Below the pieces are notes generated by a model. That model was not told the origin of the DNA. It made no database searches and saw only the letters and a program-made list of their open reading frames with translations. A DNA stretch of 64,000 nucleotides, from the IMG/VR virus record IMGVR_UViG_3300031857_000002, positions 256,176-320,175 of that record; one strand, 5' to 3'. Made by a program: the position numbers and the translations under genes. Positions 412-57,246 of the stretch are shown here, in pieces (position 1 is the stretch's first letter; every line of letters starts with the position of its first letter).

Positions 412-751
412 CAAGTTCTTTCAATTGGGATTTCAAAGTCCGTACTGCTGTTTCATCACCATTGTAGATGGCAGCGGACTTTTCGGGATAGCGTTGTTTG
501 AATCTTTTTACTATCTCCACTAGGTTAACTCCCTGACACACAAAATCTTGTGTTATGCTATTATAACAGAAATACTGATTGTCCACAACCTCTACGGTAA
601 GAGGAATCAGTCTTTCCAATTCTAAATCATTAGATACTTCTTCAAGATCCGAATCCGTACGTCGTTTGATCATCCAGGTCATCAAGTTCAGTCCAACATG
701 GATCAGTATCATGATTACCACCCCATTCACAAGAAATTCTATAATGTCCAT
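377..751 (-). CDS. Hypothetical protein with N-terminal TM helix
   Basis: 124-aa ORF, hydrophobic N-terminus; TAAATA 5 nt before ATG; overlaps start of downstream phosphoesterase. Confidence 0.65.
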   Translation of the reverse strand: MDIIEFLVNGVVIMILIHVGLNLMTWMIKRRTDSDLEEVSNDLELERLIPLTVEVVDNQYFCYNSITQDFVCQGVNLVEIVKRFKQRYPEKSAAIYNGDETAVRTLKSQLKELDENSSGIRYTS

Positions 752-759
752 GATTGTAT

Positions 760-1062
760 TTACATCCTCATTGATTCTAAAGTGATCATCTTGCCCAGTT
801 CCTTGTCAAAGTCCAGGTCGTCAGATACCACATACAGTTTGTAGTTGGTACGATCTGTCTTGTGATCATAATGTCGGAATGACACAATCTTGCCGCCCAC
901 AGCTTTGCGAACTGTGATATTGAGTCCGTCCTCTGAGTCAATATCATTACCGCGTATGGTAACTCTGTTTCGAAGAGATTTGCTAAGAGTAGCAGGTTCT
1001 TCATCATACATATCCCGACCGTCTTGATACCATCGATAGATCAAACGTTTAACCCACTTCAT
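760..1062 (-). CDS. Hypothetical protein
   Basis: Start taken at MKWVKR (ATG overlaps TGA of upstream gene). Confidence 0.6.
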   Translation of the reverse strand: MKWVKRLIYRWYQDGRDMYDEEPATLSKSLRNRVTIRGNDIDSEDGLNITVRKAVGGKIVSFRHYDHKTDRTNYKLYVVSDDLDFDKELGKMITLESMRM

Positions 1063-1511
1063 GCTGATTTCCTTTGTTTTAAATATTGTTCCCATTGTAT
1101 CCACTGATTCTTGACCAGGAATCCCCAGTCGCGTTGTTTGGGTCCGGGCATGAACAAGGTCCAGGCTGTGATGTCAGGATCAAGTTCAATGCGATGAAAA
1201 CTGTTGGCCTTGCTGATTCTAAAATGTCCCGGTCCGCGCCACACCTGGTACTCACCAGTTTTTCTTCCCACAGTATCAAAGTGCGGGATCCATTCCCAGT
1301 AGCCACCTTTTAGTATGAGAGTGGCATAAGGCCAAGGATGGTCATGCACATCATCGGGATCTGATTTGAGAAACTTGTGCAAAAACACATTAAACGGGAA
1401 TCGTTCACGTTCCCGGAGAAACAAATAATAGCGTTCAAGATATGGTTCATTTTGTACTCGGTCCATCACAATGCGTTTGCGTCCCAAACGGTCCAAAAGT
1501 TTTAATAGCAT
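1059..1511 (-). CDS. Cupin-fold protein
   Basis: DVHDHPW...ILKGGYWE and FHRIEL cupin-type motifs; SD GGAG and own promoter. Confidence 0.65.
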   Translation of the reverse strand: MLLKLLDRLGRKRIVMDRVQNEPYLERYYLFLRERERFPFNVFLHKFLKSDPDDVHDHPWPYATLILKGGYWEWIPHFDTVGRKTGEYQVWRGPGHFRISKANSFHRIELDPDITAWTLFMPGPKQRDWGFLVKNQWIQWEQYLKQRKSA

Positions 1512-1532
1512 TGGCTACTCCTTTACAACACA

Positions 1533-1561
1533 ATTATACAACATCACGCATTATTTGTCAA
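1533..1561 (-). promoter_or_regulatory. sigma70-type (early) promoter
   Basis: TTGACA-17 bp-TATAAT, perfect consensus, upstream of cupin gene. Confidence 0.85.
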
Positions 1562-1572
1562 TAAGTATTTGG

Positions 1573-2715
1573 ATGGAAAATTATCATCCCGAAACCTATT
1601 GCACCTATGCGTTTGGTGGCTATGCCAGTCACGAAAAATGGATATGTTGTGCCGGAACAGGCCAGTTCAACAGCTTTGCCGAAGTTAACCAAAGTGAAGA
1701 AATCCAACAACTGCGGCAAGCACTACAGCGTGGTGAGCGTCATCCCACCTGTGCAGTGTGTTGGGACGCAGAAGCGGCCGGGAACGCCAGTGCCAGGTCT
1801 GTAGGATCTGCTGATCGAGACTGGCAAAGGATTCAAATTGAATTTGCAGAACCCAAACTGCGACATCTTTGGATTGACAGTGGCAGTGTATGCAACTTGG
1901 CTTGCAGAATCTGCGAACCCAGATACAGTAGCAGTCTCTACAAAGAGCACAAGGATCGATTTGGGCATACCACTGTGCCTATTACCAAGACCAATGTGGC
2001 GTATTTGATCACAGAAGACTTTAGCCAAATCGAAAACATCATGATACTAGGCGGTGAGCCATTTCTGAACCTGGACTATTGTGCTGTGTTAGAGGAAATT
2101 GTGCGCCAAGGTCGTGCTGGCCAATGTACCTTGGTGTTTTTCAGCAATGGTACTGTGCGCCCAAGTCAACGTGTGATAGATTTGCTGGCGCAGTTTTCAC
2201 AAGTGGTATTGTATTTCAGCACTGATGCTGTGGGAGACCAATTTGGGTATGTACGTACCAATGGCATCTGGTCTCAGGTCATAGACAACATCGACTACAT
2301 TGCATCGGCAAGTATTCCGCAGCTCAGGCAGAACTTTCACATAACAGTGAGCGCATTGAATGTGATGTATCTAGATGAGTTACTCTCCTGGATGGCCGAG
2401 TATTATGGTGCTGGACAAGATCCTCGTGCGGTAATTGCCCAAGCCATGAGCGAACACCGAATAACCTACATGGTAACCAATCGTCCCTCGCACTACTCGT
2501 TTGGTATTTTTACTGATGCCCAGCGTCAACAGGTATTAACACATTTGGAACATAGTGCTTTTGATCTACAAGGTATTGCAAATCAAATTACCAACTACTC
2601 CTATACACCTACACATGCTGAAAAGTTCTGGTCAGAGACTGAGTGGACCAAACAGTACCAAGGTCTAGCAGTTGAACAATACCTACCAAGGTTGGTCAAC
2701 ATCTTGCAGTCGTAA
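1573..2715 (+). CDS. Radical SAM protein with N-terminal Cys-rich (twitch/SPASM-like) segment
   Basis: CNLACRIC (CxxxCxxC), ILGGEPF, FSNG, FSTDAVG; N-terminal C..CC..CAVC; start MENY 5 nt after TAAGTA. Confidence 0.85.
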   Translation: MENYHPETYCTYAFGGYASHEKWICCAGTGQFNSFAEVNQSEEIQQLRQALQRGERHPTCAVCWDAEAAGNASARSVGSADRDWQRIQIEFAEPKLRHLWIDSGSVCNLACRICEPRYSSSLYKEHKDRFGHTTVPITKTNVAYLITEDFSQIENIMILGGEPFLNLDYCAVLEEIVRQGRAGQCTLVFFSNGTVRPSQRVIDLLAQFSQVVLYFSTDAVGDQFGYVRTNGIWSQVIDNIDYIASASIPQLRQNFHITVSALNVMYLDELLSWMAEYYGAGQDPRAVIAQAMSEHRITYMVTNRPSHYSFGIFTDAQRQQVLTHLEHSAFDLQGIANQITNYSYTPTHAEKFWSETEWTKQYQGLAVEQYLPRLVNILQS

Positions 2716-2742
2716 AAAAAGGCTGCCGTAAGCAACCTTTTT
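2716..2742. terminator. Bidirectional intrinsic terminator
   Basis: AAAAAAGGCTGCCGTAAGCAACCTTTTTT between convergent genes. Confidence 0.7.
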
Positions 2743-5997: not shown

Positions 5998-6402
5998 AAA
6001 GATTTCCATGGTGTTGTACAGTTGATCCTGGGGTACATTATGCTGACGATAGCCCTCTAGTACTGTTGCAAAATAACCACGACTTGGAGGTTCATCCAAA
6101 TGTCCAGGTTGCATGTAGTAAGTTTCTGCCAACACAGTCCTGCCCTCAAACGCCACTCTAAGAGCACGGCGATTGTAGTAGTAAGGAAACCCTTCTAAGC
6201 TGTCAAGTGCTTTTAGATGGCTGTTGTTGATTTCCCACAGTACTCCGTCCACAAAAGACCCGCGACATTTTACAACATCGGCATGGGTGGCAAAACGGAA
6301 CACATGGTCAATCAAGCGGGCATGCCCAAAACTTGTTGCGCCAGGGCAACGTAGAGCCATTTCGGCCTGATTTGTGTTCATTCCATAAGAAAAATATAGC
6401 AT
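5992..6402 (-). CDS. Gamma-glutamylcyclotransferase (GGCT/AIG2-like)
   Basis: YFSYGMN, GVLWEI, LDSLEGFP..Y motifs; apparently leaderless. Confidence 0.8.
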   Translation of the reverse strand: MLYFSYGMNTNQAEMALRCPGATSFGHARLIDHVFRFATHADVVKCRGSFVDGVLWEINNSHLKALDSLEGFPYYYNRRALRVAFEGRTVLAETYYMQPGHLDEPPSRGYFATVLEGYRQHNVPQDQLYNTMEIFG

Positions 6403-6439
6403 ACAAGTATTATAGCAAACTGTAGATTAATGGTCAACC
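6402..6439 (-). repeat. Early promoter cassette, copy 3 (truncated; ATA replaced by ATG)
   Basis: GGTTGACC-17-TATAATACTTGT then ATG; no SD. Confidence 0.8.
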
Positions 6440-6955: not shown

Positions 6956-6988
6956 ATAGATGTTGCAGGGTCTAACATTAAATAGATC

Positions 6989-8116
6989 ATGCAATGTAAA
7001 TTTTTAAAACATGGTCTGGCTATCAGTTACGACCACGTGGTCAAGCCCTGTTGTGAATGGCAGCAGGATTCCAATTACCCAATTCAGAATCACATCAGTC
7101 AAGTTGACCTATCAACTTGGCATCAAAAAAACAAAGTTTTTGAGCAACAATTGGCCAACAATGAATGGCCTGTAGCCTGTGGTCAATGTCAGCACAGAGA
7201 ACAACAAAATCGTCAAGACAGCATAAGATTAAACGGCAAACAATCCTATGCTCATTACACCGAAGACGATATTACTTTGGAAATTCGTCCAGGCAATGTG
7301 TGTAACTTTAGCTGCCAAACTTGCTGGCCAGAAGCCAGCAGTCGTGTGAGTCAACATCATGCACAGGCAGGATTGATTAATATCAAGTCTATTGACAGTA
7401 AACAAATAGATAACTTTGACTTTTTACTACCGATTGCCTCAAGGATCAAAGATGTAGTGTTGCTGGGCGGGGAACCATTTTATGATCCTAACTGTAAAAA
7501 GTTTCTAGCCTGGTCACAACAAAATCTTCGCAGCCGCATCACAATGTTTACCAATGGTAGTGCGGTAGACTGGGATTGGGTTGATAGTTATCCTGGACGG
7601 ATCACCATGGTGTTTAGCATAGATGCTGTGGGCACCGCAGCCGAGTACATTAGATTTGGAACCGACTGGTCACAAGTTCTATCTAATTTTCAACAGGCTC
7701 AAGCACACGCCAAGGTAGATCTACGGGTAAACATCACTGCATCTGTGTACAACTACTACCACCTGGACCAGGTGATTGATTTGTTACTGCCACACTGGCC
7801 TACAGTAGTGACATTTGGCAGTCCCAGAATTGAGTATTTTTTAGAATCCTGTGTGCCGCTAAGGCATCGTACTGCAATAATTGATCGATTACAATTGGCA
7901 TGTGTGCGCATCATGAAAAGCACAGTACCACCAGATCAAAAAACCAATGCAATAAATGCACTAAAATCTATTATTACAAATTTAAAAGTCAAGGACTGGG
8001 ACCAAGACCAGTACACCGCGTTAAAAATCTATGTGCAAAAGATGGATCAGGTCAAACATGTAACTGTGAGAGATCACTGTGAATTTTTAGCTGATGTGTT
8101 AGATTTTTCCGAATAG
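6989..8116 (+). CDS. Radical SAM protein with N-terminal Cys-rich segment
   Basis: CNFSCQTC, LLGGEPF, FTNG, FSIDAVG; N-terminal C..PCC..CGQC. Confidence 0.85.
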   Translation: MQCKFLKHGLAISYDHVVKPCCEWQQDSNYPIQNHISQVDLSTWHQKNKVFEQQLANNEWPVACGQCQHREQQNRQDSIRLNGKQSYAHYTEDDITLEIRPGNVCNFSCQTCWPEASSRVSQHHAQAGLINIKSIDSKQIDNFDFLLPIASRIKDVVLLGGEPFYDPNCKKFLAWSQQNLRSRITMFTNGSAVDWDWVDSYPGRITMVFSIDAVGTAAEYIRFGTDWSQVLSNFQQAQAHAKVDLRVNITASVYNYYHLDQVIDLLLPHWPTVVTFGSPRIEYFLESCVPLRHRTAIIDRLQLACVRIMKSTVPPDQKTNAINALKSIITNLKVKDWDQDQYTALKIYVQKMDQVKHVTVRDHCEFLADVLDFSE

Positions 8117-20059: not shown

Positions 20060-21061
20060 TTACTTGATCTGTGTCCAAACACGCTCACGGATCTGCTTTG
20101 TTAAACTGTCTGGCAGTGCCACATAGTCTAAGTCTGCGGCATCTTTCTTGCCATTCTTGAATGCCCAATCAAAGAATTTTAGTACTTCATCGCTGGTGGC
20201 TTTGCTCTTTGGCTCTTTGTACATGATGATGAAACTGGCTGAACTTACTGGCCAAGCATTGGGGTTCTTTTGATCCACAATGCTCAATCCCATACCAGGA
20301 ACACTAAACCAATCAGCACCGTCTGCCGCGGCTGCAAATGTTAGGTCATCTGGGCTAACATATTTGCCTGACTTGTTTTGTAACTGTAGGAATACCATAT
20401 TGTTTTTCTTAACATAAGCATACTCTACATAACCAATTGAACCTTTGATACGGTTCACATTGGCAGCAACACCTTCATTGCCCTTGCCCCCTACACTATT
20501 TGGTGAGGGCCATTTAACTGCGGCACCACGACCTACTTTAGCTAGCCACTCAGGACTTACTGTAGCAAGATAGTCGGTCCAGTTGAATGTGGTGCCAGAA
20601 CCGTCGGCACGGTGAACCACTGTGATCAGTTCGTTAGGCAAATTTTTGCCTGGATTCAATGCCACCAACTTAGGATCATTCCATCTAGCAATAGTACCCA
20701 TGAATACTTCAGCCATAACTGGGCCGGTGATACGTAGTTCTCCAGGCTTGACGCCGTCTAAGTTAACTACTGGAACAGTGCCGCCAATGATGGCAGGAAA
20801 TTGAACCTGACCGTTTTTGTCTAGGTCTTCACCTTTGACTGGAGCATCAGTTGCACCAAAGTCTACGGTCTTTGCGTTGATTTGTCTAATGCCACCTGAA
20901 CTACCAATGCTTTGATAGTTCAAACTGTTGCCAGTTGCTTTCTTGTATCCTTCTGCCCATTTAGAATAGATAGGCATTGGAAAAGTTGCACCAGCACCTG
21001 TAATGTCTGCGTTTGCTGAAAATGTTACTGCGGTTAATAAGATTGCTAGTAGTTTGTTCAC
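20060..21061 (-). CDS. pstS: Phosphate ABC transporter substrate-binding protein
   Basis: Signal peptide, ITGAGATFP, YQSIGSSGG, DFGATD, HRADGSGTT, GKGNEGVA; GTG start with SD AAGGAG. Confidence 0.97.
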   Translation of the reverse strand: MNKLLAILLTAVTFSANADITGAGATFPMPIYSKWAEGYKKATGNSLNYQSIGSSGGIRQINAKTVDFGATDAPVKGEDLDKNGQVQFPAIIGGTVPVVNLDGVKPGELRITGPVMAEVFMGTIARWNDPKLVALNPGKNLPNELITVVHRADGSGTTFNWTDYLATVSPEWLAKVGRGAAVKWPSPNSVGGKGNEGVAANVNRIKGSIGYVEYAYVKKNNMVFLQLQNKSGKYVSPDDLTFAAAADGADWFSVPGMGLSIVDQKNPNAWPVSSASFIIMYKEPKSKATSDEVLKFFDWAFKNGKKDAADLDYVALPDSLTKQIRERVWTQIK

Positions 21062-21103
21062 TGAGTTCTCCTTGTTGTGACAAGATTATTTAAGGAGAAT
21101 AAT

Positions 21104-21121: not shown

Positions 21122-21123
21122 AA

Positions 21124-22001: not shown

Positions 22002-22749
22002 TGTCTTTCTCCCGAGTCCAAGTAATGATTTCCCAATGGCCATCCCAGTGTTCTACAAGTGCTGTACATGATTCAACCCAGTCGCCATCATTCATGTATG
22101 TTACACCGTTGATTTCTTTTATTTCTGCATGGTGTATGTGTCCACAGATCACGCCATCAAATCCACGCTTCTTGCAATAGTCTGCTAGATTTTCTTCAAA
22201 CTTGAATATAAAGTCTACTGCTTTTTTAACTTTGTGCTTAAGAAACTTGCTAAGGCTAAAGTACCCAAAACCCAAGCGACGACGAATCCAATTAAATTTA
22301 TTGTTGAGGCCAAGAACAAAGTCATAGGCTTTATCTCCTAAGAATGCTATCCAAGGTGCCAGTCTAGTAATACCATCAAACAAGTCACCGTGGACAACTA
22401 AGTAGTGCTTACCATCAGCACCTATATGTTCTATTTGATTGTGTATTTCTATTAGACCAAAACTGAAACCATAGGGTATCATGGGTCTTAGGAATTCATC
22501 GTGATTGCCTGCAATGAATACAACTCTAGTGCCACGCTTGGCATGACCTAGCACACGACGAACAACATTGGTGTGGCTCTGTTTCCAACGCCATTTGTTT
22601 TGTTGTATACGCCAGGCGTCGATGATATCCCCTACCAGGTAGAGTGTATCACATGAGTTGTGTTTGAGAAAGTTATTGAGGCGATCGGCTTGACAATCTT
22701 TGGTTCCAAGATGGACATCACTGACAAAGATTGAGCGATATGTCTTCAT
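21868..22749 (-). CDS. Metallophosphoesterase of LpxH-like/PlcP (phospholipase C) type
   Basis: YRSIFVSDVHLGT..CQA, LVGDIID.W, GNHDEFLR, HGDLFD, GHIHH, NDGDWVESCTAL.E. Confidence 0.8.
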   Translation of the reverse strand: MKTYRSIFVSDVHLGTKDCQADRLNNFLKHNSCDTLYLVGDIIDAWRIQQNKWRWKQSHTNVVRRVLGHAKRGTRVVFIAGNHDEFLRPMIPYGFSFGLIEIHNQIEHIGADGKHYLVVHGDLFDGITRLAPWIAFLGDKAYDFVLGLNNKFNWIRRRLGFGYFSLSKFLKHKVKKAVDFIFKFEENLADYCKKRGFDGVICGHIHHAEIKEINGVTYMNDGDWVESCTALVEHWDGHWEIITWTREKDNVVTDINSGSREQSSGRARKNRTGIQGPDQLRNDTGVNEVAVKI

Positions 22750-22770
22750 CTATTATTTAAGATGATGACT

Positions 22771-22796: not shown

Positions 22797-23450
22797 CTAC
22801 TCAGGTACTCTGGTCCAGGCTATGAGTGCTCGTTTGCCCGGGATACCATTTGCTAGAAAGTTGTCACTGGTGTGAAACTTGAATCTAGCGGCAGCAAACA
22901 TACTGCCTTTCTTCCACTTGAAGATATCTTCTATGGTAAACCAGTCAAACAAATCACCGGGAATGTGACTGAAATACTGTTGTCTTGTGGCAGCATCTAT
23001 TGTGGGATTTTCATACGGCGGCACATCTTTTGTGTACTCATGTGGTTCTTTGATGATGCTGCCTTCCTTGAACACTATGGTATGGCTGTCATAGGTGTCC
23101 AAGGGAATGATCAAGGTCCAAGCGGGCACAGTGGGTTCGGGACTTTTTTTCCAGCCACTGGCCACATCGCTGTGAACTCGATAAGGATCAACACAGTCAA
23201 AAATGTGTATTTGTTCAAAGAACAGGTCCTGACCAAATGCCTCTTGAAACTTGGGTGCCAGTATTTCAACTACCTTGGCAAAGTGTGAGTCATAGTAATC
23301 AAACACATAATAGTCACCGGACTTGACAATTTCTCCTGACGGCGTGGGGTTGAAATTTTCATGCGGCTTCACTGCCATGACCATGGATTCAATAGTGTCT
23401 ATTTCAGCATCAGACAAAAAGTTGTCAATAATTTTTGAGTCAAAGTTCAT
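22797..23450 (-). CDS. Putative 2OG-Fe(II) oxygenase-fold protein
   Basis: RVHSD (HxD), TLIIPLD, distal KFHTSD; start MNFD 5 nt after TAAATA. Confidence 0.5.
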   Translation of the reverse strand: MNFDSKIIDNFLSDAEIDTIESMVMAVKPHENFNPTPSGEIVKSGDYYVFDYYDSHFAKVVEILAPKFQEAFGQDLFFEQIHIFDCVDPYRVHSDVASGWKKSPEPTVPAWTLIIPLDTYDSHTIVFKEGSIIKEPHEYTKDVPPYENPTIDAATRQQYFSHIPGDLFDWFTIEDIFKWKKGSMFAAARFKFHTSDNFLANGIPGKRALIAWTRVPE

Positions 23451-23458
23451 GTGCATAT

Positions 23459-23746
23459 TTACATCAACATACGAATCAGACCCACACTGTCAATAGTGGT
23501 CAACAGTATATAGTTAGCCAGCATGCCAAAAGATTTCCTAGTCCAACTAGCCCAAGCATACAAACCACAGCCAAGGATCCACACAGGGTAAAGAGCAAGA
23601 AGCGGAGGCGTGGGTACGGTAAGTGCCATGACAATTGAACAACCAATACTAATACCCCAAGCAAGCAACTCAATAACAAAGCGAGTTCGGTTGGACTTAA
23701 AATCATCTCGTATCCAGTCAAATGTGTTAAGCAATATATCGTTCAT
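23459..23746 (-). CDS. Small multi-TM membrane protein
   Basis: Three hydrophobic segments in 95 aa. Confidence 0.65.
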   Translation of the reverse strand: MNDILLNTFDWIRDDFKSNRTRFVIELLAWGISIGCSIVMALTVPTPPLLALYPVWILGCGLYAWASWTRKSFGMLANYILLTTIDSVGLIRMLM

Positions 23747-24746: not shown

Positions 24747-24752
24747 ATGAGT

Positions 24753-24781
24753 ATTATATACTCAATTGTACAAAAAGTCAA
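24753..24781 (-). promoter_or_regulatory. sigma70 promoter giving leaderless uvsE mRNA
   Basis: TTGACT-17-TATAAT, ATG 6 nt downstream, no SD. Confidence 0.75.
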
Positions 24782-29096: not shown

Positions 29097-29117
29097 GTGA
29101 TTTCCTTTTAAATATGT

Positions 29118-31714: not shown

Positions 31715-31938
31715 TAGAACTGTTTTTTAGGCAACTCTTGCTCACGTAGTTTTTTACGCCAACGTTGTTTGGCTGCTGATGCCTTGAGTTTGCGTTGAGT
31801 TGTGGGTTTGATATAAAATTCACGCTCTCTTAGATCATTTAACAATCCATCAGCTTGAATTTTCTTTTTGAATTTGCGCAATGCTTTTTCTACATTGCCA
31901 TCTGTGACTAGTACCGATCTTCCGTGTAATTTTTCCAT
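31714..31938 (-). CDS. rpsU: Ribosomal protein bS21
   Basis: V.V.DGNVEKALRKFKKK....G...DLREREFYIKPT..RK...AA..RW.KK. Confidence 0.92.
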   Translation of the reverse strand: MEKLHGRSVLVTDGNVEKALRKFKKKIQADGLLNDLREREFYIKPTTQRKLKASAAKQRWRKKLREQELPKKQF

Positions 31939-31945
31939 AAATGCA

Positions 31946-33136: not shown

Positions 33137-34653
33137 GTATTATTTGTTTTGGTTTGTAAACGTTGTGCCACTTGTTCTTGTTCGCTGGCGCTGAGTAAGT
33201 CAACATCATATGTGCCACTATTGATTTTGTCAATGAGGTGATCAATGTATGCTGTATCGTAAGTATAGTTATCTGCTGTGGCTTTGTCAACTAAAATCCA
33301 ACGATTGCCGTTGAATTTGAACAATTGATTTGGTGCTACATCTGTACGCACAAAACTGTCGCCACGTGCAGGAGCAGTAGGGAATGTGTTACCAAAGCTG
33401 GAGTTAGGGGCAGGCTTGAGATACTGCATCCATGGTAGCTCTGTTATCTCGCCACGCTCTAACATGTTGCGTTGACCCTTTAGTGTTTCGCCTGGATTGA
33501 GCTCTTTCCAGTGTTGCATTGCCGCTTTTTCTTCTGGCGTGCCGTAGTCGATAATTTCTGTTTCAAAACTAGGCATGTCAACATACACTGGTTCGCCGAT
33601 GGGCTCAGATTTAGCAACCATGGGTTTGAGATTTTCAAAATGTACAAACGGCTTGTCTAAGTACGCATGGCGGCCGCGGTCAAACTCTGTTTTTAATTCT
33701 TCTACTTCTTCTTCAGTTGAAGGATATGTTGTTGTGGTAGTGTTGTACATCCAACCTGGTGGTGATGGATCTGTGCGTATCATCCAGTCTGGATGGTCTT
33801 GGGCCACTGTTTGTTTTATCTGATCAATCTGCTCAGTAGTCAATGGACCATCGTCTGGGGGATATGCAGGCTCGTCGTGTACAAATCCACCCCGGCCTTG
33901 TCGTGCCCATTCAAACTGTTTGTTAGCGGCAAGAATGAGTGTGAGTGCTAGTGGATCAAACACCAGCACAATCATGATAATAACAAGACGTACTGCTTTT
34001 TCTAACACATTGGCATCTGGATTATCACCGTAAACCAGGGCCGCAATGTATTTTACAGGACCAACCTCGGCTTCAATCTTGCGGAACTCTGCTGCCAGCG
34101 GCGCCCGTTCTTCACTAAGCGTAGTAATCGTTTTTTGCTCGGCCGAGATTTCAGCAAGGAGACGCCCACGTTCCTTTTGTTGAGACCTACGGAGAGCCAC
34201 GGACTTATCTGCCCCCGTTTCTGATGTACTTCGGCCCATGACTTGGTCAACTGCCTCATCCATCTGTTTAAGCGCCTTGCGGTTAACATCTATATTTTCC
34301 TTTGCAATCTTAATTTTTTCATCATATATAGCAACCTTGCTTATAGAGTCACCAGACACTAGACTTTGATCACTGTGTGCCTTTGACAAGTATCCAAAAA
34401 TACCCATTGATGTCAACAACATAAGGAATGCCACAGCAGGTATTAAGTATGCTTTGAATGCCCACCCTGCTCGTTTCCAGTTGTTGTGCAACCACACAGT
34501 GGCCACAATCTTGCCAAGCTCTAAACTGCCACCCATGATGATCACAGGTATGGTTGCAGCCGAGAAAATGGCTGTGAGGCCTGCTACTGAATAATAGGCA
34601 GCCACAATGCTCAGTAGCAGAGCTGTGGCCAATATGCTGAAACCAAATATCAT
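33133..34653 (-). CDS. Membrane protein with coiled-coil and acidic C-terminal region
   Basis: Three N-terminal TMs, heptad region, further TM ([12 protein letters not shown]). Confidence 0.7.
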
Positions 34654-34658
34654 AGTCT

Positions 34659-34979
34659 TTATTTACCGGGATTTTTTACCACTATCACAGCGTGTTTAAC
34701 TGCGCACCAGGTAGCAAACGACGGATCTGGCACTTCAAACCAAACGTAATTTTCTACACGATTTCTTTCCCACGCAAACTTTTCTAGTTTGCGTCGTACT
34801 CTAGGCTGGCCTTTCCAGCCATTGTGACCATATAGTGTAGTAGCTTCTTTCATGATTGCGTACCAAGTTTCGGTATCACGCAAATCAAACCAAATACGGT
34901 GCATGACCAAGGGCGTTGATTCAAGCGAGCTGAGTGACGCAGACATACTCGACGCAGAGGTCTCTGTTTCAACAGACAT
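34659..34979 (-). CDS. Hypothetical protein
   Basis: 106 aa, SD AAGGA, downstream of structured leader. Confidence 0.65.
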   Translation of the reverse strand: MSVETETSASSMSASLSSLESTPLVMHRIWFDLRDTETWYAIMKEATTLYGHNGWKGQPRVRRKLEKFAWERNRVENYVWFEVPDPSFATWCAVKHAVIVVKNPGK

Positions 34980-36807: not shown

Positions 36808-38177
36808 AGTTTCTCTCCTGGTTCAAATCCGCGGAATCGCACAAAGCGAGGAAATCTCAAACTGTATGATCCGTCTTGGTTTTGAGTAACTGCGTCCGCT
36901 TCAACCTCAACCACCCGATCAAGAAGCTCATTGCGAGCGGCCCAATACTCATCGCGATTGCTATCAGACAAACCGCTACCAACATTAACACGAATAGTTC
37001 TGTCATTGTCTTCTCCTTCACAAATTATAGCACCCAGGCGGCCTAGATTGCGACCAGTACCTTCCTCAAATCCCACAATATTCAAATCAACTGTGATTGT
37101 GGGTTTCCATTTCATCCAGAAGTCCGAACGTTTGCACTCATAAGGTGCATCCATGCTCTTGATCATGATACCTTCGTAGCCTTCTTCTACCGAAGCTTCG
37201 GCAAATCGGCGCATGACGTCATGACCTTCAGCTGTGTCCAAGTCCACATCCATACCTGGCATCACACGCACACAACCATTTTCTGGCAGGTGTGCTTGTG
37301 TACGTTTCAACAAGTCAATGCGTTTGTGTTGCTGTAGATTACAGAAGCCTTCGCGGAACTCACTTAGTGGTAAAATGTCAAACACATGATAAACCATGTC
37401 TGCGGTTTTGGCATCTCGTTTGCGTTGTGCTTGCTTCATCAAGTCCTGGAAGTTCTTGCCCACAATCTCACCATCCAACACAAACTGTCCACCAAAGGCA
37501 GAATCACGCTGGAATGCTTTGCGATGTTCTTCGATAAAGTCTGCAATCTGTGGGAAGTTCTCAAACTCTTTGCCATTACGGCTGTACAATGTACAAGCAG
37601 ATCCATTTACAACTGCCAACACACGTACACCATCAAGTTTGACTTCCAGGCGTTTGATACCTTTGAGCTTTTTAGGTTGGTCTGTGGAGTCCTGTGCTAG
37701 TTGGCAACTGAACACAGGAATCTTCCATTCAGTTTTGCCCAGCACTTTGTTGAGTGTTTTTTCAGAGATACCGCATCTCAAGTCCTTGATTAACACACGA
37801 CGGGCTAGACCATTCCACTCTTCAGAGTCAAACATTTGACTGCAAGTTTCAATTGCTTCTCTTGCACGATTACCAGTGATACTACGAGTGCGTAGGCTTT
37901 CTAACAAGGCCCAAAATCCAGGCCAATGATTTGGTTGGCCAGTCAAACCTTCAGTCTCAGGCACTTGCCGGATGCCAAACACATAGAAAGGATTGTAGGC
38001 TTGATAGCAGTTGAACAAGAAAGCCTGTGCGTCAGCACTGCCTAGTTTGGATGCCATCAAAGCCTTTTCGATTGTTTTTTCTTTGTGTATGCGGCTGTCC
38101 GAACTTTCTAAGTCGCGGATCCAACCTGCTGCCATTACACCCGAGAACCTTGGGTCTGAGAAGTTTGTTTCATTCAT
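36804..38177 (-). CDS. ATP-dependent DNA ligase
   Basis: EVKLDGVR (KxDG), SRNGK, LDGEI, VFD, EGIMIK, WMKWKP, OB domain VGSG, SLRFPRF. Confidence 0.95.
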   Translation of the reverse strand: MNETNFSDPRFSGVMAAGWIRDLESSDSRIHKEKTIEKALMASKLGSADAQAFLFNCYQAYNPFYVFGIRQVPETEGLTGQPNHWPGFWALLESLRTRSITGNRAREAIETCSQMFDSEEWNGLARRVLIKDLRCGISEKTLNKVLGKTEWKIPVFSCQLAQDSTDQPKKLKGIKRLEVKLDGVRVLAVVNGSACTLYSRNGKEFENFPQIADFIEEHRKAFQRDSAFGGQFVLDGEIVGKNFQDLMKQAQRKRDAKTADMVYHVFDILPLSEFREGFCNLQQHKRIDLLKRTQAHLPENGCVRVMPGMDVDLDTAEGHDVMRRFAEASVEEGYEGIMIKSMDAPYECKRSDFWMKWKPTITVDLNIVGFEEGTGRNLGRLGAIICEGEDNDRTIRVNVGSGLSDSNRDEYWAARNELLDRVVEVEADAVTQNQDGSYSLRFPRFVRFRGFEPGEKL

Positions 38178-38189
38178 ATATTTAATCCG

Positions 38190-45137: not shown

Positions 45138-45140
45138 ATA

Positions 45141-52302: not shown

Positions 52303-53294
52303 GATTTTTTAGTGCAATATGTGTTGCAAGCAGTTAGTTGTTTAGGGGTGTCAAATGTGTCAATTATCTGATTGAACCACACTACGCCTTTTTCCAATGT
52401 GTCTACAGTGGCTCCGTCCCTGAGCACATGAACATCTTCCACATATGTTGTGCCAGGCTTGCTGAAATTGCCAATGAAACAGCACGGATCTATATTGCCG
52501 TCGGATGCAATATACATACTCACTGGTGACCAAATGTGTAGGGCCTTGCACTCAACTTCATCGTAGGGTGCCTGGGCCAGTTTACGAGGTCCGTGCAGAT
52601 TGATCCATTCTTCTGTGATTTGATCTGGGAAAGTTTTACCTGATTCTTTTTTGAGTTCAAATATTTTTTGGCCGTGTTGATTGTATACTGGTCCCCAGTC
52701 TCGGCCATGATGTCTCAAATTGAATTTTTTAAATCCCAGTGCTTCACTGCGTTCACGTGCTTCGTTGATCTGATGACGATTGTGATCAAATTCAGTCATG
52801 CACCAATTGGCATGCCCACCGGCTGCAATAAAGATTTGAGCATTTTTGATCACTGTTTCAAACACTGTGTTTTGTCGGTAGATATGATGAGTGTCTTCAA
52901 GACCGTCAATGCAAAACTCCATAACCACTCCTGTGGCTGCCAAGGATTGCCAAAATTCACGACCTTGGGCGCCGCCATTGGTGGATGCAGAAAGTGTTAA
53001 TCCAGGTTTTCCAGGTTTAAATTTTTGTCCGTGTTGTCTAAACCAAGCCAATATACTGGGTGTTTCAGGATTCATCACTAGGTCGCCAAGGTTTCCATTT
53101 ATTAACACACGTTTCAGTTGTGCAACCACAGTCTCAGGCACAATTGTTTTGATTTTTTCCAAGGTCAAATTGGTTTCTTTATAACCAAAATTGTAGGGAA
53201 ATCCATGATAGTTGCGCATGCACATGGGGCACCTTGCGTTACACAAGGAACTGATTTCTATTTGTAATTCTCGAATGTCTGAGATGTTAATCAT
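52290..53294 (-). CDS. Radical SAM protein with C-terminal twitch/SPASM-like domain
   Basis: CNARCPMC, GNLGD, STNG, CIDGL; C-terminal C..YI..DG..DPCC..C...C. Confidence 0.88.
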   Translation of the reverse strand: MINISDIRELQIEISSLCNARCPMCMRNYHGFPYNFGYKETNLTLEKIKTIVPETVVAQLKRVLINGNLGDLVMNPETPSILAWFRQHGQKFKPGKPGLTLSASTNGGAQGREFWQSLAATGVVMEFCIDGLEDTHHIYRQNTVFETVIKNAQIFIAAGGHANWCMTEFDHNRHQINEARERSEALGFKKFNLRHHGRDWGPVYNQHGQKIFELKKESGKTFPDQITEEWINLHGPRKLAQAPYDEVECKALHIWSPVSMYIASDGNIDPCCFIGNFSKPGTTYVEDVHVLRDGATVDTLEKGVVWFNQIIDTFDTPKQLTACNTYCTKKSWYQ

Positions 53295-54100
53295 GATGTA
53301 TTTAAGATATATTTGCTGGCTACCATTTCAGCAAACCGTCTGTTGGTCTCTGCATTGTAATGCCCGCCTGGTAACTCACCTCTTGCACTACTGGCATAGG
53401 TTACAATATTGTTAATGTGCAACCAATCAATGCCTGTGTCTTCCCAGGCTCCACGTATGTCAGGAAATTGGTTTAATAATTTGATACCACCAGCTGGGTC
53501 TAGAACAGAACTAACAAAGTTGTGGGTAGAAAACACATGTATGTTCTTGACTCCGTGACTGCGACATATGGCTTGTGAAATCATCACTGTGACTAGAAAT
53601 CTATAAAAATTAGATTCCCATCCTTCTAGCAGTTTTAAGTTAACAAAATAATCAGTTTCAGGTCCTAATCGAGGCACTGTGCCAGCATTTACAAACCTTG
53701 GTAAAATTTTATCCTGATACTGATTATTGAACAATACTTCTCGATCAATAGAACTAAACTGCAATATCACAGTGTCTGGTTTAATCTTTATTAGATCTTG
53801 TGCCAGCTTGTAAGGCCAGTAACTGGGGCCTGACTTGGCCGCAGACTGATTAATTACTGTTTGTTGAGTTATTTCTGCCAACTGCCCTGGCCAACATAAC
53901 TTTGCTTCCAGGTCATGAAGTACCTTGTCACCTAGTGTTCTATGAAGTTCTTGACTTTCTTTTATTGCAATATCACTACCGCACCAGTTGTGATATTTGA
54001 CTAGATTGGATGTGCGTTCTGTGTGGCCTGGCCAACTGGGGTACAAATAATCAGCTAGTTCACTGCCCGAACTAAAGCTGTCACCTAGCACATAGATCAT
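53291..54100 (-). CDS. SGNH/GDSL-like hydrolase/acyltransferase
   Basis: VLGDSFS block I; N.S...G; GGHYN block V. Confidence 0.6.
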   Translation of the reverse strand: MIYVLGDSFSSGSELADYLYPSWPGHTERTSNLVKYHNWCGSDIAIKESQELHRTLGDKVLHDLEAKLCWPGQLAEITQQTVINQSAAKSGPSYWPYKLAQDLIKIKPDTVILQFSSIDREVLFNNQYQDKILPRFVNAGTVPRLGPETDYFVNLKLLEGWESNFYRFLVTVMISQAICRSHGVKNIHVFSTHNFVSSVLDPAGGIKLLNQFPDIRGAWEDTGIDWLHINNIVTYASSARGELPGGHYNAETNRRFAEMVASKYILNTS

Positions 54101-54854: not shown

Positions 54855-55214
54855 TTAAACGCCGCGGGATTTGTTCATTGCCGATTTGGCGGCATTGGCA
54901 ACTATGTCTTGTGCTTTGTTCACAGGCATAGCAACCGGTTCGGCAGGTTCGCCTTCACCTTTGAATATGATTTCTTGTGCTTCTGGAGTCATTGGTTCTA
55001 GTACCGAACTCAATGGAGGTTGTCCCACAATCTCTTCAATGTTGTCTTCGGTAACATTAATGCCCAGACTTTGTGCTAGGCTGATAAATGCACCTCGAGA
55101 GATTTGTTTTTGTGCGCCTTCGTCGTCTGCACGTCCGGCAAGAAAGTTGACCAGCCCTAACAGTTCGTCGGGGCTGGGTGTTGTGGATTCTGTTATGAAT
55201 TCACGGAATCGCAT
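54855..55214 (-). CDS. Putative head internal protein
   Basis: Leader MRFREFITE resembles T4 capsid-targeting sequence MKTYQEFIAE. Confidence 0.55.
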   Translation of the reverse strand: MRFREFITESTTPSPDELLGLVNFLAGRADDEGAQKQISRGAFISLAQSLGINVTEDNIEEIVGQPPLSSVLEPMTPEAQEIIFKGEGEPAEPVAMPVNKAQDIVANAAKSAMNKSRGV

Positions 55215-56098
55215 TATCTACGTGCTCGGCCCAGACCAGCACCGCCTGCGGCTGCTTCTGGTTCTGCAGGAACTTCAGGAGGCATTGCGCCGCCCATTTC
55301 TGGAGCAGGAGCGGCACCCATGTTGGCTTGTACATCAACCACACCAGGAGCAGTGGCCATGCCAGCGTCAGGAGCAGGTGCTTGACCTGTTACCACGCCC
55401 AGGGCTTGATCCAAGGCAGCTTTGGCACCTTGTAAGTTTTGTACCAGGCCAGCAAGAGCGGCTGTGGCATCTGTGTTGAATTGTGTGGCTTGATCAATGC
55501 CCACTTGGTTCTTGATCGAGTCAACTAGAGCTGGTAATTCTTTGAACTGTAATTCAGTTACATCTTCCAACATGCCTTGCATTTTGTCAACCATGTCTTG
55601 TGCGGCCAACACAACTTGAGCTTGTTGTACTTCGCTTTCATTCAAGCGAGTCATCACACGACGCAGACGACTTTCGGCCTGCATCATGGCAGCACCAGCA
55701 ACAAGTTTTTGCTCATCAGGGTTGAGTGTTTGACCACTTTGGCTCTTTTTCAAAGCAGCAGCCAGTTTGGGATCTTTAACTTGCACAGTGCTTGGTTGTG
55801 CTGGCTTGGCGCCTGGTGCGGCACCAGCAACTGGAGCAACAGGAATAGCCTCCTCAGCCATGCGTGTGGTCAGTGCCTGTTCCATCATTACCAGTTTAAG
55901 GTAACCTGGGTTTTGTTGGCTCTGATATCTAGCAGACCCTGAACGATGCTCACGTAGCAAACCTTGCACACGTTGCAACAGGTGCTGAGTTTGACGCGAT
56001 GTTAAACGATCAAACTCAATGTTAGAACCAAAGTAACTTTCGAAAACTTTAGCGATTTGTTTTGTTGGCGACGGGGCGGCCAGTTCTTGCAGTTTCAT
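55214..56098 (-). CDS. Putative head internal/scaffold-like protein
   Basis: MKLQEL leader, several xxE sites, helical core, Pro/Ala/Gly tail; TAAATA upstream. Confidence 0.55.
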   Translation of the reverse strand: MKLQELAAPSPTKQIAKVFESYFGSNIEFDRLTSRQTQHLLQRVQGLLREHRSGSARYQSQQNPGYLKLVMMEQALTTRMAEEAIPVAPVAGAAPGAKPAQPSTVQVKDPKLAAALKKSQSGQTLNPDEQKLVAGAAMMQAESRLRRVMTRLNESEVQQAQVVLAAQDMVDKMQGMLEDVTELQFKELPALVDSIKNQVGIDQATQFNTDATAALAGLVQNLQGAKAALDQALGVVTGQAPAPDAGMATAPGVVDVQANMGAAPAPEMGGAMPPEVPAEPEAAAGGAGLGRARR

Positions 56099-56546
56099 TT
56101 GAGAATCCTCTAATTTGCATATATTTAGCCGAAATTAAACATTTCTCTAATTCGGCATCCAAGGCTGACAGACGATCTATCTTGCTTTGAATTTTGGTGG
56201 AAACACATTCGTAGAAATCTTCGCGATTGCTACGATTAGCCAAGGCTTGACGGCAGTGTATATCCGCCGCTAGGCTATGTTTTTTGGTATCTAGCGTGAG
56301 TATGTATCGTGCTAGATTGTTTTGGTTGTGCTGATCAGCAATGCACCAACTGATAGCACTTTTTTTGCTACCAAATGTTATAGAATCTTGATTTTTAATA
56401 TTAACTATAAACTTGTAGTCTGTGGGTATAATATTGTATTTTCCAAAAGCTAGTATGCCGCCGCGACCATCATCCACAATCAATTTATCAGTTAGATTGA
56501 GTAGTTCTTTTGCGGCAAAGGCTTCTAGCTTGTTTTGTTTGTTCAT
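56049..56546 (-). CDS. Hypothetical protein
   Basis: 165 aa in late operon. Confidence 0.65.
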   Translation of the reverse strand: MNKQNKLEAFAAKELLNLTDKLIVDDGRGGILAFGKYNIIPTDYKFIVNIKNQDSITFGSKKSAISWCIADQHNQNNLARYILTLDTKKHSLAADIHCRQALANRSNREDFYECVSTKIQSKIDRLSALDAELEKCLISAKYMQIRGFSNETARTGRPVANKTNR

Positions 56547-56803
56547 TTAAATACATACGTTGTGACTAGCCATCCAACAGTGGCCAACAGCATGCCAATG
56601 ATACCCGATCCCCAAGTGACCAATTGATCATTACGTTTGGCTGCCATTATTTGCACCATGTCATGCACTTCATTAATGGTGGTTTTTAAACTGTCAACAT
56701 TAGATTCGAGAGTCTCTAATTTAAGTTCAAGTAACTTATATCGCTCAGCACACAATTCAACATGTGCTTCAAGACTCTTTTTCTCAATATCAGTTGTGTC
56801 CAT
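56543..56803 (-). CDS. Coiled-coil protein with C-terminal TM
   Basis: IEK.SLEAHVELCAERY, heptads, TM tail. Confidence 0.65.
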   Translation of the reverse strand: MDTTDIEKKSLEAHVELCAERYKLLELKLETLESNVDSLKTTINEVHDMVQIMAAKRNDQLVTWGSGIIGMLLATVGWLVTTYVFK

Positions 56804-56815
56804 TATAGGCTCCCA

Positions 56816-57223
56816 TCATTTATTTATGGGTTCAAACCAAATGTTCTGATCCGGGCCGTCAGTTACCAGTGTGTATTGAGTTGTGAGTGTTTCAGTAAGT
56901 CCTGTGAGCATGGGTACTCCTGCGCACTCTGCAATCAGTCCAGATAGGTCAGTGTTGTAGACTTCTGCATGCTCTACAGAGAATTCAAAGCGCCATTCGC
57001 CTGGAGCACTGATCACTGGCTCTACATCAAATACTTGTGTGCGCAGGCTGATCAACTGATTCAATGTTTCCCAGTTGCGCTGTTGATTTCTGGCAAACAT
57101 CCACTCGTGTTGATTGTTAATAGTGTTTCCAGCATCGTCTGTAAATGGCACCTGGCTGGGCCTGTAGTGTCCAGTTACGCCAGTAGGTGAGCAATCAAAA
57201 AGAGTTCTACAGAGTATTCGCAT
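56816..57223 (-). CDS. Hypothetical protein
   Basis: 135 aa, TAAATA 8 nt upstream. Confidence 0.65.
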   Translation of the reverse strand: MRILCRTLFDCSPTGVTGHYRPSQVPFTDDAGNTINNQHEWMFARNQQRNWETLNQLISLRTQVFDVEPVISAPGEWRFEFSVEHAEVYNTDLSGLIAECAGVPMLTGLTETLTTQYTLVTDGPDQNIWFEPINK

Positions 57224-57246
57224 TATAGGAGTATTTAACGGCCAAC

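What the first reader, a model, noticed from the sequence alone, without database searches (positions are those of the whole stretch)
749..57237. Systematic leaderless late mRNAs: TAAATA placed 3-8 nt before ATG with no Shine-Dalgarno
Seen: TAAATA-to-ATG spacing of 5 nt (gene 751), 4 (6989), 4 (22749), 5 (23450), 3 or 6 (29118), 6 (34653), 4 (53294), 8 (57223), and TAAGTA 5 nt (1573). Two sigma70 promoters also abut ATG at 6 nt (6402, uvsE 24746). Known: T4 late promoter is TATAAATA, with the start a few nt downstream. Inference: a class of mostly accessory enzymes is translated leaderless while structural genes keep SDs, giving a two-tier translation programme. This may relate to the phage bS21.
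Basis: partly seen in the sequence, partly recalled or inferred. Interest (0 to 1): 0.68.

Follow-up and report, generated by a model that had tools for sequence, protein, structure and literature searches.

The report
Phage promoters that abut start codons
In this 320-kb freshwater jumbo phage and its relatives, about one gene in seven has a promoter box 4-8 bases before its ATG, leaving no room for a ribosome-binding site, so these genes are probably made as leaderless mRNAs; no RNA 5' ends could be mapped to confirm this.

Summary
The window is the last 64 kb of a 320-kb IMG/VR phage.

- **Enrichment.** TAAATA is the most enriched hexamer before start codons genome-wide.
- **Spacing.** Its distance to the ATG is sharply bimodal. 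One peak is at 4-8 nt (36 genes, no Shine-Dalgarno possible). The other is at 17-28 nt, with a Shine-Dalgarno starting 4-8 nt after the box.
- **Host-type promoters.** About ten TTGACN-N17-TATAAT promoters also abut the ATG. Seven perfect ones sit exactly 6 nt away.
- **Conservation.** Boxes and spacer lengths are kept in dozens of relatives while spacer sequences drift.
- **Comparators.** T4, CBB and PA5oct have no such short-gap class.
- **Sigma factor.** The phage encodes a gp55-family late sigma.

Leaderless or near-leaderless (3 nt or less) transcription from two promoter classes is the best explanation, but no 5' ends could be mapped.

- The "accessory versus structural" split is weak: portal, baseplate and virion genes are in the short-gap class.
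- "Late" timing is inferred, not shown.
- The bS21 link is untested, and the bS21 gene itself has a leader with a Shine-Dalgarno.

This is a new variant of known kinds.

The parts
749..762 (-). TAAATA (762-757), 5 nt, ATG 751. Short-gap promoter of a 124-aa ORF. The TAA of the box is the stop codon of the upstream ORF 760-1104.
1562..1575 (+). TAAGTA variant box (1562-1567), 5 nt, ATG 1573. Radical SAM gene. The start is uncertain, with an alternative ATG at 1471.
6400..6437 (-). Sigma70-type promoter: TTGACC (6437-6432), N17, TATAAT (6414-6409), 6 nt, ATG 6402. GGACT/AIG2-like gene, 136 aa.
6979..6991 (+). TAAATA (6979-6984), 4 nt, ATG 6989. Radical SAM gene, 375 aa. A second TAAATA lies at 6953-6958.
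22747..22759 (-). TAAATA (22759-22754), 4 nt, ATG 22749. Metallophosphoesterase, 293 aa. An in-frame TAG lies directly before the ATG.
23448..23461 (-). TAAATA (23461-23456), 5 nt, ATG 23450, with an alternative ATG at 23456 overlapping the box. The TAA of the box is the stop of upstream ORF 23459-23746.
24744..24781 (-). Sigma70-type promoter: TTGACT (24781-24776), N17, TATAAT (24758-24753), 6 nt, ATG 24746. UvdE UV-damage endonuclease, 339 aa.
29109..29120 (+). TAAATA (29109-29114), 3 nt, ATG 29118 (6 nt to ATG 29121). Metallophosphoesterase, 264 aa. It heads a divergent unit with only 21 nt to the opposite-strand neighbour.
34651..34665 (-). TAAATA (34665-34660), 6 nt, ATG 34653. 506-aa protein, 5 nt after the upstream gene.
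38175..38184 (-). TAAATA (38184-38179), only 1 nt before ATG 38177 (DNA ligase, 457 aa). Too close for the T4 geometry, so a doubtful member.
53292..53304 (-). TAAATA (53304-53299), 4 nt, ATG 53294. Radical SAM gene, 334 aa. The box lies inside the 3' end of the upstream gene, which overlaps by ATGA.
57221..57237 (-). TAAATA (57237-57232), 8 nt, ATG 57223. 135-aa ORF. The start is less certain.
31714..31968 (-). bS21 gene (31938-31714, 74 aa) with the other architecture: TAAATA (31968-31963), AAGGAG 5 nt after the box, ATG 24 nt after the box.
21061..21092 (-). Example of the leadered class: TAAATA (21092-21087), 25 nt containing AAGGAG, GTG 21061 (PstS-like). Other sites of this class: 3706, 6478, 15065, 19959, 30931, 49887, 56122, 56821, 61233, 61257.

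Best explanation
The phage uses two promoter types, and each comes in two fixed architectures.

- **Type 1** is a host sigma70-type promoter, TTGACN-N17-TATAAT. It also drives the phage's own gp55-family sigma gene.
- **Type 2** is a bare TAAATA box (TAAGTA tolerated) with no -35 element. It equals positions -11 to -6 of the T4 late promoter. It is presumably read by the phage gp55-like sigma on host core RNA polymerase.

In the leadered architecture the Shine-Dalgarno begins 4-8 nt after the box, so the transcript starts just before it and the leader is only about 12-25 nt. In the abutting architecture the ATG sits where transcription should start:
- exactly 6 nt after TATAAT;
- 4-5 nt after TAAATA in most cases, and 7-8 nt in some. 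In the gap-7 cases an A lies 5 nt after the box.

These mRNAs would begin at the A of AUG or carry at most about 3 nt of leader. They would have to be translated without a Shine-Dalgarno, by direct binding of ribosome and initiator tRNA to a 5'-terminal AUG.

**Shown:** the motifs, spacings, conservation, the sigma gene and the contrast with T4, CBB and PA5oct.
**Inferred:** the start sites, the sigma-box pairing, the timing and the mode of translation.
For: - **Bimodal gap.** The gap from box to ATG peaks at 4-5 nt and again at 17-28 nt, with almost nothing at 9-16.
- **Specificity.** 36 of 157 TAAATA lie 4-8 nt before an ORF-opening ATG, against a 2.3% baseline. Only TAAGTA among the 18 single-base variants shares this.
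- **SD edge.** In the leadered class the SD tetramer starts 4-8 nt after the box in 21 of 36 cases and never closer than 4. The start site must therefore lie within about 6 nt of the box. An A peaks at the 6th nt (56%). That is the T4 geometry: an 8-bp box about one helical turn upstream of the start (PMC2988020).
- **Sigma70-type.** Seven perfect promoters have exactly N6 to the ATG. Eleven others share a 24-nt leader cassette with SD.
- **Divergent heads.** 13 of 36 short-gap genes head divergent units, some with only 21-28 nt between opposed start codons.
- **Conservation at three loci.**
  - CAT-N4-TATTTA-N5-TAAATA-N7-ATG is kept in all 16 distinct relatives at 56-100% protein identity. 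In 13 of them the spacers keep their length while changing in sequence. One has N4 between the boxes and two have N5 before the ATG.
  - The UvdE promoter keeps TATAAT-N5/6-ATG in most of about 70 relatives.
  - The portal gene keeps TAAATA 4-7 nt before the ATG in 43 of 44 distinct relatives.
- **Clade-wide.** Five other relatives of about 300 kb or more show 18-26 TAAATA-N4-5-ATG each, against 1-13 for the reversed control.
- **Comparators.** TAAATA at gap 3-8: CBB 0 of 168, T4 6 of 225, PA5oct 8 of 611, and T4's TATAAATA none below 13 nt.
- **Sigma.** A gp55-family sigma is encoded: phrog_12791 E = 2e-64, T4 gp55 E = 8e-7. It has a sigma70-type promoter with a leader and SD.
- **Genes served.** TAAATA precedes tail tube, adaptor, baseplate, portal, virion and endolysin genes.
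- **Avoidance.** TAAATA is depleted inside genes on both strands: 27 against 75 and 28 against 84.
Against: - No RNA 5' end was mapped. The only public RNA runs are assembled contigs of 90-97% relatives and may contain DNA.
- 23 of 36 short-gap genes sit 5-19 nt behind a same-strand gene. Read-through transcripts with reinitiation could also express them.
- In 10 cases the TAA of the box is simply the upstream stop codon.
- Gaps of 1-3 and 7-8 nt do not put the canonical +1 on the A of ATG.
- ATG use is not significantly higher than elsewhere: 43 of 47 against 263 of 315, p = 0.2.
- 5' coding structure is only marginally weaker, p = 0.06-0.09.
- The avoidance of TAAATA inside genes is shared by other TA-rich hexamers: ranks 88 and 24 of 4096.
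- No gp45 homologue was found.
- The host, and hence its capacity for leaderless translation, is unknown.
Confidence: 0.65

Rival explanations
1. The boxes are real promoters, but their closeness to the ATG is a by-product of genome compaction. Short-gap genes would be translated mainly from longer polycistronic transcripts by termination-reinitiation coupling. Any leaderless transcript from the box would be minor or untranslated.
For: - 23 of 36 short-gap genes follow a same-strand gene by 5-19 nt.
- In 10 cases the TAA of TAAATA is the upstream stop codon.
- Window 53294 overlaps its neighbour by ATGA.
- About half of all genes lack both an SD and a box, so SD-independent initiation is common in this genome anyway.
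Against: - 13 short-gap genes head divergent units. In several only 21-28 nt separate the opposed start codons, so an upstream transcript would have to start inside the antisense gene.
- The gap is sharply peaked at 4-5 nt, and at exactly 6 nt for TATAAT, rather than spread.
- Spacer lengths are conserved across relatives.
- CBB and T4 are equally compact and lack the short-gap class.
Confidence: 0.2
2. In the short-gap class TAAATA acts on the RNA. It would be an AU-rich, SD-independent ribosome-binding or enhancer element sitting where the SD normally lies, not a promoter.
For: - The box occupies -5 to -14, the SD position, and ties with SD hexamers as the commonest hexamer there.
- Many genes in this genome lack an SD.
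Against: - The same exact hexamer lies 17-28 nt upstream of SD-led genes, too far to act as a ribosome site.
- Single-base variants other than TAAGTA are not enriched, which is unlike a loose AU-rich element.
- It is depleted on the antisense strand of genes as well.
- Back-to-back copies sit in divergent intergenic regions.
- A gp55-family sigma is encoded.
- Sigma70-type promoters show the same abutting geometry.
Confidence: 0.07
3. TAAATA marks an endoribonuclease cleavage site. Processing of longer transcripts would generate mRNAs with very short leaders, as proposed for MazF-made leaderless mRNAs.
For: - AU-rich sites are typical RNase targets.
- MazF-type processing to leaderless mRNAs has been proposed in E. 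coli (cited in PMC3616915).
Against: - The arguments against the RNA-level rival apply here too: divergent back-to-back boxes, depletion on both strands, and homology to the T4 late box with a gp55-like sigma.
- It does not explain the sigma70-type N6 cases.
Confidence: 0.03
4. The pattern is a chance product of AT-rich intergenic DNA.
For: The overall TAAATA count in the window is not above expectation: 40 against 34.
Against: - Tenfold positional enrichment over all hexamers.
- A sharp peak in the gap distribution.
- Variant specificity.
- Conservation in relatives.
Confidence: 0.01

Closest known systems
T4 late promoter (TATAAATA) read by gp55 with gp33 and the gp45 clamp
   Same: - The TAAATA core equals T4 positions -11 to -6.
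- There is no -35 element.
- A gp55-family sigma is encoded.
- The box sits before structural genes, on either strand, often embedded in gene ends.
- An A lies about 6 nt downstream.
   Different: - Positions -13/-12 are not conserved, and the full 8-mer occurs once in the window.
- No gp45 homologue was found.
- In T4 no TATAAATA lies closer than 13 nt to an ORF-opening ATG, with a mode of 28 nt. Here a quarter of the boxes lie 4-8 nt away.
Predicted ATAAATA late promoters of Rak2-like jumbo phages (CBB, GAP32), and PA5oct
   Same: - Nearest named relatives by tail sheath, at 35-44% identity.
- They carry the same late-sigma family, phrog_12791.
- An ATAAATA motif before structural genes, a gp55-like sigma and no gp33 or gp45 are reported for CBB (PMC5259590).
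   Different: - CBB has 0 of 168 TAAATA at gap 3-8 and peaks at 28-35 nt.
- PA5oct is at background, 8 of 611.
- The abutting architecture is therefore specific to the freshwater clade.
Classical leaderless phage mRNA: lambda cI from pRM
   Same: A sigma70-type -10 box placed so that transcription starts at the A of AUG, with translation lacking an SD (PMC10491246). This is the same geometry as the seven TATAAT-N6-ATG cases.
   Different: That is a single regulatory gene of a temperate phage. Here there are about 46 genes (about 56 with TAAGTA), under two promoter classes, in a lytic-type jumbo phage.
Leaderless-rich bacteria (Deinococcus, mycobacteria, alphaproteobacteria)
   Same: A sizeable fraction of genes has the promoter directly before AUG:
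- 47-60% in Deinococcus deserti and about 14% in mycobacteria (abstracts);
- 171 leaderless mRNAs in Sinorhizobium meliloti, all starting with AUG (PMC3616915).
   Different: - Those are cellular genomes with mapped start sites.
- Mapped jumbo phages show the opposite: phiKZ had no leaderless transcript and AR9 had UTRs of 26-491 nt.
Freshwater bS21-encoding jumbo phages (Chen et al. 2022, PMC9723584)
   Same: Lake phages of about 300 kb with a bS21 gene that is co-expressed with late structural genes. bS21 was proposed to bias translation initiation.
   Different: - Those phages are predicted to infect Bacteroidetes, and their bS21 sits in the capsid/terminase module.
- Here bS21 sits beside an AAA+ ATPase.
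- This genome uses canonical TTGACN/TATAAT promoters and AGGAG, which argues against a Bacteroidota host.
- That paper does not mention promoters or leaderless mRNA.

Membership tests
T4-type (gp55-dependent) late promoter | 8-bp box TATAAATA | tested here: not met
   Only the 6-bp core TAAATA is conserved, and the positions before it are near-random. TATAAATA occurs once in the window against 2 expected. Variation at -13/-12 is known in T4 relatives such as Aeh1 (PMC2988020).
T4-type (gp55-dependent) late promoter | phage encodes a gp55-family sigma | tested here: met
   phrog_12791 'sigma factor for late transcription', E = 2e-64, at G000 61984-62883(-). T4 gp55 matches the same ORF at E = 8e-7. 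No Pfam hit.
T4-type (gp55-dependent) late promoter | no -35 element | tested here: met
   No conserved position from -20 to -1 of the box across 95 sites.
T4-type (gp55-dependent) late promoter | sliding-clamp activator gp45 and co-activator gp33 | tested here: inconclusive
   phrog_223 (gp45) has no match in the 92%-complete genome. gp33 was not searched. CBB is reported to lack both as well.
T4-type (gp55-dependent) late promoter | precedes late (virion, lysis) genes | tested here: met
   Tail tube, head-tail adaptor, baseplate wedge, portal, virion proteins and endolysin. It also precedes enzymes such as thymidylate synthase, ligase and radical SAM proteins.
T4-type (gp55-dependent) late promoter | transcription starts about 6 nt after the box, at late times | not testable with these tools
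   Only RNA contigs of relatives were available. Indirect support: the SD never starts less than 4 nt after the box, and A peaks at the 6th nt.
Leaderless mRNA | 5' end of the transcript at, or within a few nt of, the start codon | not testable with these tools
   No raw RNA reads.
Leaderless mRNA | -10-type promoter element placed 4-8 nt before the start codon, with no SD | tested here: met
   36 TAAATA genes, about 10 TAAGTA and about 10 sigma70-type. The box fills the SD position.
Leaderless mRNA | the abutted codon is the true start | tested here: met
   It is the first in-frame start in about 32 ORFs. Profiles align from residue 1-12 for the kinase, thymidylate synthase, radical SAM, metallophosphoesterase, virion, GGACT and exoribonuclease proteins. 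A few starts remain uncertain: window 1573, 6989 and 57223.
Leaderless mRNA | AUG rather than GUG or UUG | tested here: inconclusive
   43 of 47 against 263 of 315 elsewhere, p = 0.2.
Sigma70-type promoter | TTGACA-like -35, 17 +/- 1 spacer, TATAAT-like -10 | tested here: met
   Dozens of perfect or one-mismatch copies. Both window examples were verified base by base.

The most novel reading that the evidence does not exclude
A whole clade of abundant freshwater jumbo phages has made leaderless initiation a regular part of its expression programme, early and late. It would pair this with its own translation kit (bS21, 26 tRNAs including three tRNA-Met, and a permuted tmRNA) that tunes host ribosomes so that 5'-AUG and minimal-leader phage mRNAs outcompete host mRNAs.
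Probability: 0.15. Interest if true: 0.85.

Novelty: new variant of a known kind. Interest (0 to 1): 0.62.

Why it matters
Leaderless mRNAs in phages are known as single cases such as lambda cI. Jumbo phages with mapped start sites (phiKZ, AR9) have none.

Here about 13-15% of the genes of a 320-kb phage show the leaderless geometry, under both a host-type and a gp55-type promoter. The feature is conserved across a large clade of lake phages.

If confirmed, this would:
- show that a gp55-type late promoter can be fused directly to the start codon;
- give a sequence rule for calling gene starts and transcription units in hundreds of uncultured jumbo-phage genomes;
- say something about the host's translation apparatus;
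- offer a concrete, testable context for why such phages carry bS21.

Tried and rejected
- **RNA evidence.** They give no starts, strands or levels.
- **Named relatives.** Megablast and tblastn of the 744-aa window protein against named phages gave no match.
- **Host from bS21.** The best hits (55-60%) are short contigs binned into Chitinophagales and Polynucleobacter MAGs, probably phage contigs. The rest are 50% identity or less, from many phyla. No conclusion.
- **ATG preference** in the short-gap class: not significant.
- **Weaker 5' structure** in the first 36 nt of the coding sequence: marginal, p = 0.06-0.09.
- **Functional split**, structural against enzymes: p = 0.13.
- **Avoidance of TAAATA inside genes** as proof of promoter function: real but not specific, since many TA-rich and palindromic hexamers are equally avoided.
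- **gp45 homologue:** none found.
- **Members dropped.** Tail sheath (TTG at gap 0) and the ATP-dependent protease (TTG at gap 7) were dropped as short-gap members, because their profiles start further downstream. The DNA ligase (gap 1) is kept only as doubtful.
- **Not used.** Structure prediction, complex prediction and the large protein searches would not bear on the question.

Full report
**What the window is.**
- The window is bases 256176-320175 of a single 320,175-bp IMG/VR virus record. CheckV puts it at 92% complete and its GC is 44%.
- DNA of it or of close kin occurs in lake and freshwater metagenomes from many studies.
- By tail sheath its nearest named relatives are jumbo myoviruses, at 35-44% identity: PA5oct, Salicola SCTP-2, a Sinorhizobium phage and CBB.
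- My own dicodon gene caller gives 362 genes, 300 of them on the minus strand.

**The observation.**
- The hexamer is not over-represented overall: 40 in the window against 34 expected. The full T4 box TATAAATA occurs once. What is extraordinary is where TAAATA sits.
- Genome-wide it is the most enriched hexamer in the 25 nt before starts. It occurs in 46 genes against 1.8 expected, ahead of AAGGAG.
- Without any gene model, 36 of the 157 copies (23%) lie 4-8 nt before an ATG that opens at least 50 codons. The average over all hexamers is 2.3%. Only Shine-Dalgarno hexamers do as well.
- The gap histogram has two peaks: 4-5 nt (12 and 11 ORF-opening ATGs) and 17-28 nt. Almost nothing falls at 9-16 nt.
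- Of the 18 single-base variants only TAAGTA shares the enrichment, at 10 of 75.
- The refutation criterion 'no tighter than AT-rich DNA' fails.

**Are the abutted ATGs real starts?**
- After removing internal hits, 36 genes have TAAATA 8 nt or less before a start.
- In about 32 of them that codon is the first in-frame start of the ORF.
- Family profiles align from the first residues for many of them. These include the kinase, thymidylate synthase, several radical SAM proteins, two metallophosphoesterases, a virion protein, GGACT and an exoribonuclease.
- I dropped the tail sheath and the ATP-dependent protease. I regard the DNA ligase (gap 1) and window sites 1573, 6989 and 57223 as less certain.

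**The second architecture.**
- Fifty further TAAATA lie 10-45 nt before a gene start.
- In 36 of these an SD-like tetramer lies between box and start. It begins 4-8 nt after the box in 21 cases and never closer than 4.
- An A peaks at the 6th nt after the box, at 56%.
- The SD has to be inside the transcript, so the start site must lie within about 6 nt of the box.
- That is the T4 geometry: an 8-bp box about one helical turn upstream of the start, with no -35 element (PMC2988020).
- In the short-gap class the A of ATG falls at the 5th or 6th nt. In all five reliable gap-7 genes the 5th nt is A.

**Host-type promoters show the same thing.**
- A scan for TTGACA-N16-18-TATAAT found dozens of perfect or near-perfect promoters.
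- Eleven share a repeated 24-nt leader ending in AAAGGAG.
- Seven perfect ones have exactly 6 nt between TATAAT and ATG. A looser scan raises this class to about ten.
- Six nt after the -10 hexamer is the canonical sigma70 start, as at lambda pRM-cI.

**Conservation.**
- *Divergent pair.* In G000 the genes starting at 152084(-) and 152113(+) are separated by 28 nt, laid out as CAT-N4-TATTTA-N5-TAAATA-N7-ATG.
  - All 16 distinct relatives, at 56-100% protein identity, keep both hexamers unchanged.
  - Thirteen keep every spacer length while the spacers change in sequence. One has N4 between the boxes and two have N5 before the ATG.
- *Portal gene.* It keeps TAAATA 4-7 nt before the ATG in 43 of 44 distinct relatives.
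- *UvdE.* It keeps TATAAT-N5/6-ATG in most of about 70 relatives with variable discriminators. A few relatives have a leader with SD instead.
- *Whole genomes.* Five other relatives of about 300 kb or more carry 18-26 copies of TAAATA-N4-5-ATG, against 1-13 for the reversed pattern.

**Promoter or RNA signal?**
- The phage encodes a gp55-family sigma (phrog_12791, E = 2e-64; T4 gp55, E = 8e-7). That gene itself has a sigma70-type promoter with a leader and SD, as expected for a cascade.
- TAAATA precedes tail tube, adaptor, baseplate, portal, virion and endolysin genes.
- Thirteen of the 36 short-gap genes head divergent units.
- The hexamer is depleted inside genes on both strands, threefold against synonymous shuffles. 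Other TA-rich hexamers are depleted too.
- Together these points favour a DNA-level promoter over an RNA-level enhancer or a cleavage site.

**Comparison with known phages.**
- In T4 no TATAAATA lies closer than 13 nt to an ORF-opening ATG, and the mode is 28 nt.
- TAAATA at gap 3-8 is 0 of 168 in CBB, 6 of 225 in T4 and 8 of 611 in PA5oct. It is 37 of 157 here. CBB and PA5oct carry the same sigma family.
- The literature reports an ATAAATA late motif for CBB and GAP32 (PMC5259590).
- It also reports no leaderless transcripts in phiKZ and 26-491-nt UTRs in AR9.
- I found no paper that describes start codons abutting gp55-type promoters.

**What does not hold.**
- *Function.* The class split by function is weak.
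  - Short-gap genes with a known role are 4 structural (portal, baseplate wedge, two virion proteins) and 10 non-structural.
  - Leadered ones are 9 structural or lysis and 5 others (QueE-like, radical SAM, PstS-like, bS21, a signal-peptide protein).
  - Fisher p = 0.13.
- *Timing.* It is inferred only.
- *bS21.* The gene (window 31714-31938, PF01165, 64.7 bits) itself has the leadered architecture. Nothing here connects it to leaderless translation.
- *RNA.* Public RNA runs gave only contigs of relatives, so no start site could be read.
- *Coupling.* A competing or co-existing route is reinitiation on read-through transcripts. Twenty-three short-gap genes follow a same-strand gene by 5-19 nt, and in 10 the TAA of the box is that gene's stop codon.

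**Host.** It remains unknown.
- Canonical -35/-10 boxes and AGGAG argue against Bacteroidota. That is the host predicted for the bS21 lake phages of PMC9723584.
- The phage carries a permuted tmRNA that scores best as the alphaproteobacterial type: 64 bits against a threshold of 50.
- About half of its genes lack a clear SD. Both points fit a host in which leaderless mRNAs are ordinary, such as Sinorhizobium with 171 of them. This is only a hint.

**Verdict.** Leaderless or near-leaderless expression is the best explanation (about 0.65) but awaits 5'-end mapping. It is a new variant of two known things, the T4-type late promoter and leaderless mRNA.

Noticed in passing
G000 146463-147007 (-) and 136698-148365 (outside the window; locus L009 2510-3028): The phage carries 26 tRNA genes in one minus-strand cluster, including three tRNA-Met(CAT). 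It also carries a permuted two-piece tmRNA (tag ANDEQFALAA). The tmRNA matches Rfam tmRNA_permuted at 104 bits and alpha_tmRNA at 64 bits, which hints at an alphaproteobacterial host.
   Followed up: partly
window 5505, 5995, 38927, 39378, 39709 (positions of the -35 box, minus strand); also G000 127914, 243285-244583, 250852: An early expression cassette is repeated 11 times: TTGACC-N17-TATAAT followed by a nearly identical 24-nt leader ending in AAAGGAG. It sits before small genes. The leaderless variant at window 6402 uses the same promoter and the same 6-nt discriminator, but with ATG in place of the leader.
   Followed up: partly
window 21105-22771: A metatranscriptome contig of a relative (run X17) joins 21104 directly to 22772 with 5 nt of shared sequence. 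In that relative a cassette of two genes is therefore absent, including the short-gap metallophosphoesterase. The short-gap units may behave as insertable modules that bring their own promoter.
   Followed up: no
window 1471-2715, 6989-8116, 50585-52012, 52290-53294; G000 136784, 141011, 158798, 168436: There are at least eight radical SAM genes, including a QueE-like one. This suggests a large DNA or nucleotide modification pathway, possibly 7-deazaguanine.
   Followed up: no
window 20060-21061 (-): PstS-like phosphate-binding protein gene (phrog_5385, E = 1.5e-64) with a GTG start, an SD and a TAAATA box. This auxiliary gene is typical of phages of nutrient-poor waters.
   Followed up: no
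window 31714-33136 (-): bS21 lies next to an AAA+ ATPase-like gene (396 aa), not in the capsid/terminase module described for the Bacteroidetes bS21 lake phages. The protein ends in ...PKKQF.
   Followed up: partly
whole genome, gene interiors: Several palindromic or near-palindromic hexamers are among the most avoided words: TGCAGC/GCTGCA, AAGCTT, TTCGAA and GGAGCT (z from -7.6 to -9.3 against synonymous shuffles). ATATAA is the most avoided of all (20 against 96). This looks like restriction-site avoidance.
   Followed up: no
window 26194-27432 (-), 44037-47647 (-): UDP-glucose dehydrogenase-like gene and class Ia ribonucleotide reductase genes (NrdA and NrdB).
   Followed up: no
Genome-contig loci L153, L154: The closest bS21 relatives (55-60%) sit on short contigs (10.9 and 5.4 kb) binned into Chitinophagales and Polynucleobacter MAGs from one co-assembly. 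These are probably phage contigs mis-binned into bacterial genomes.
   Followed up: no
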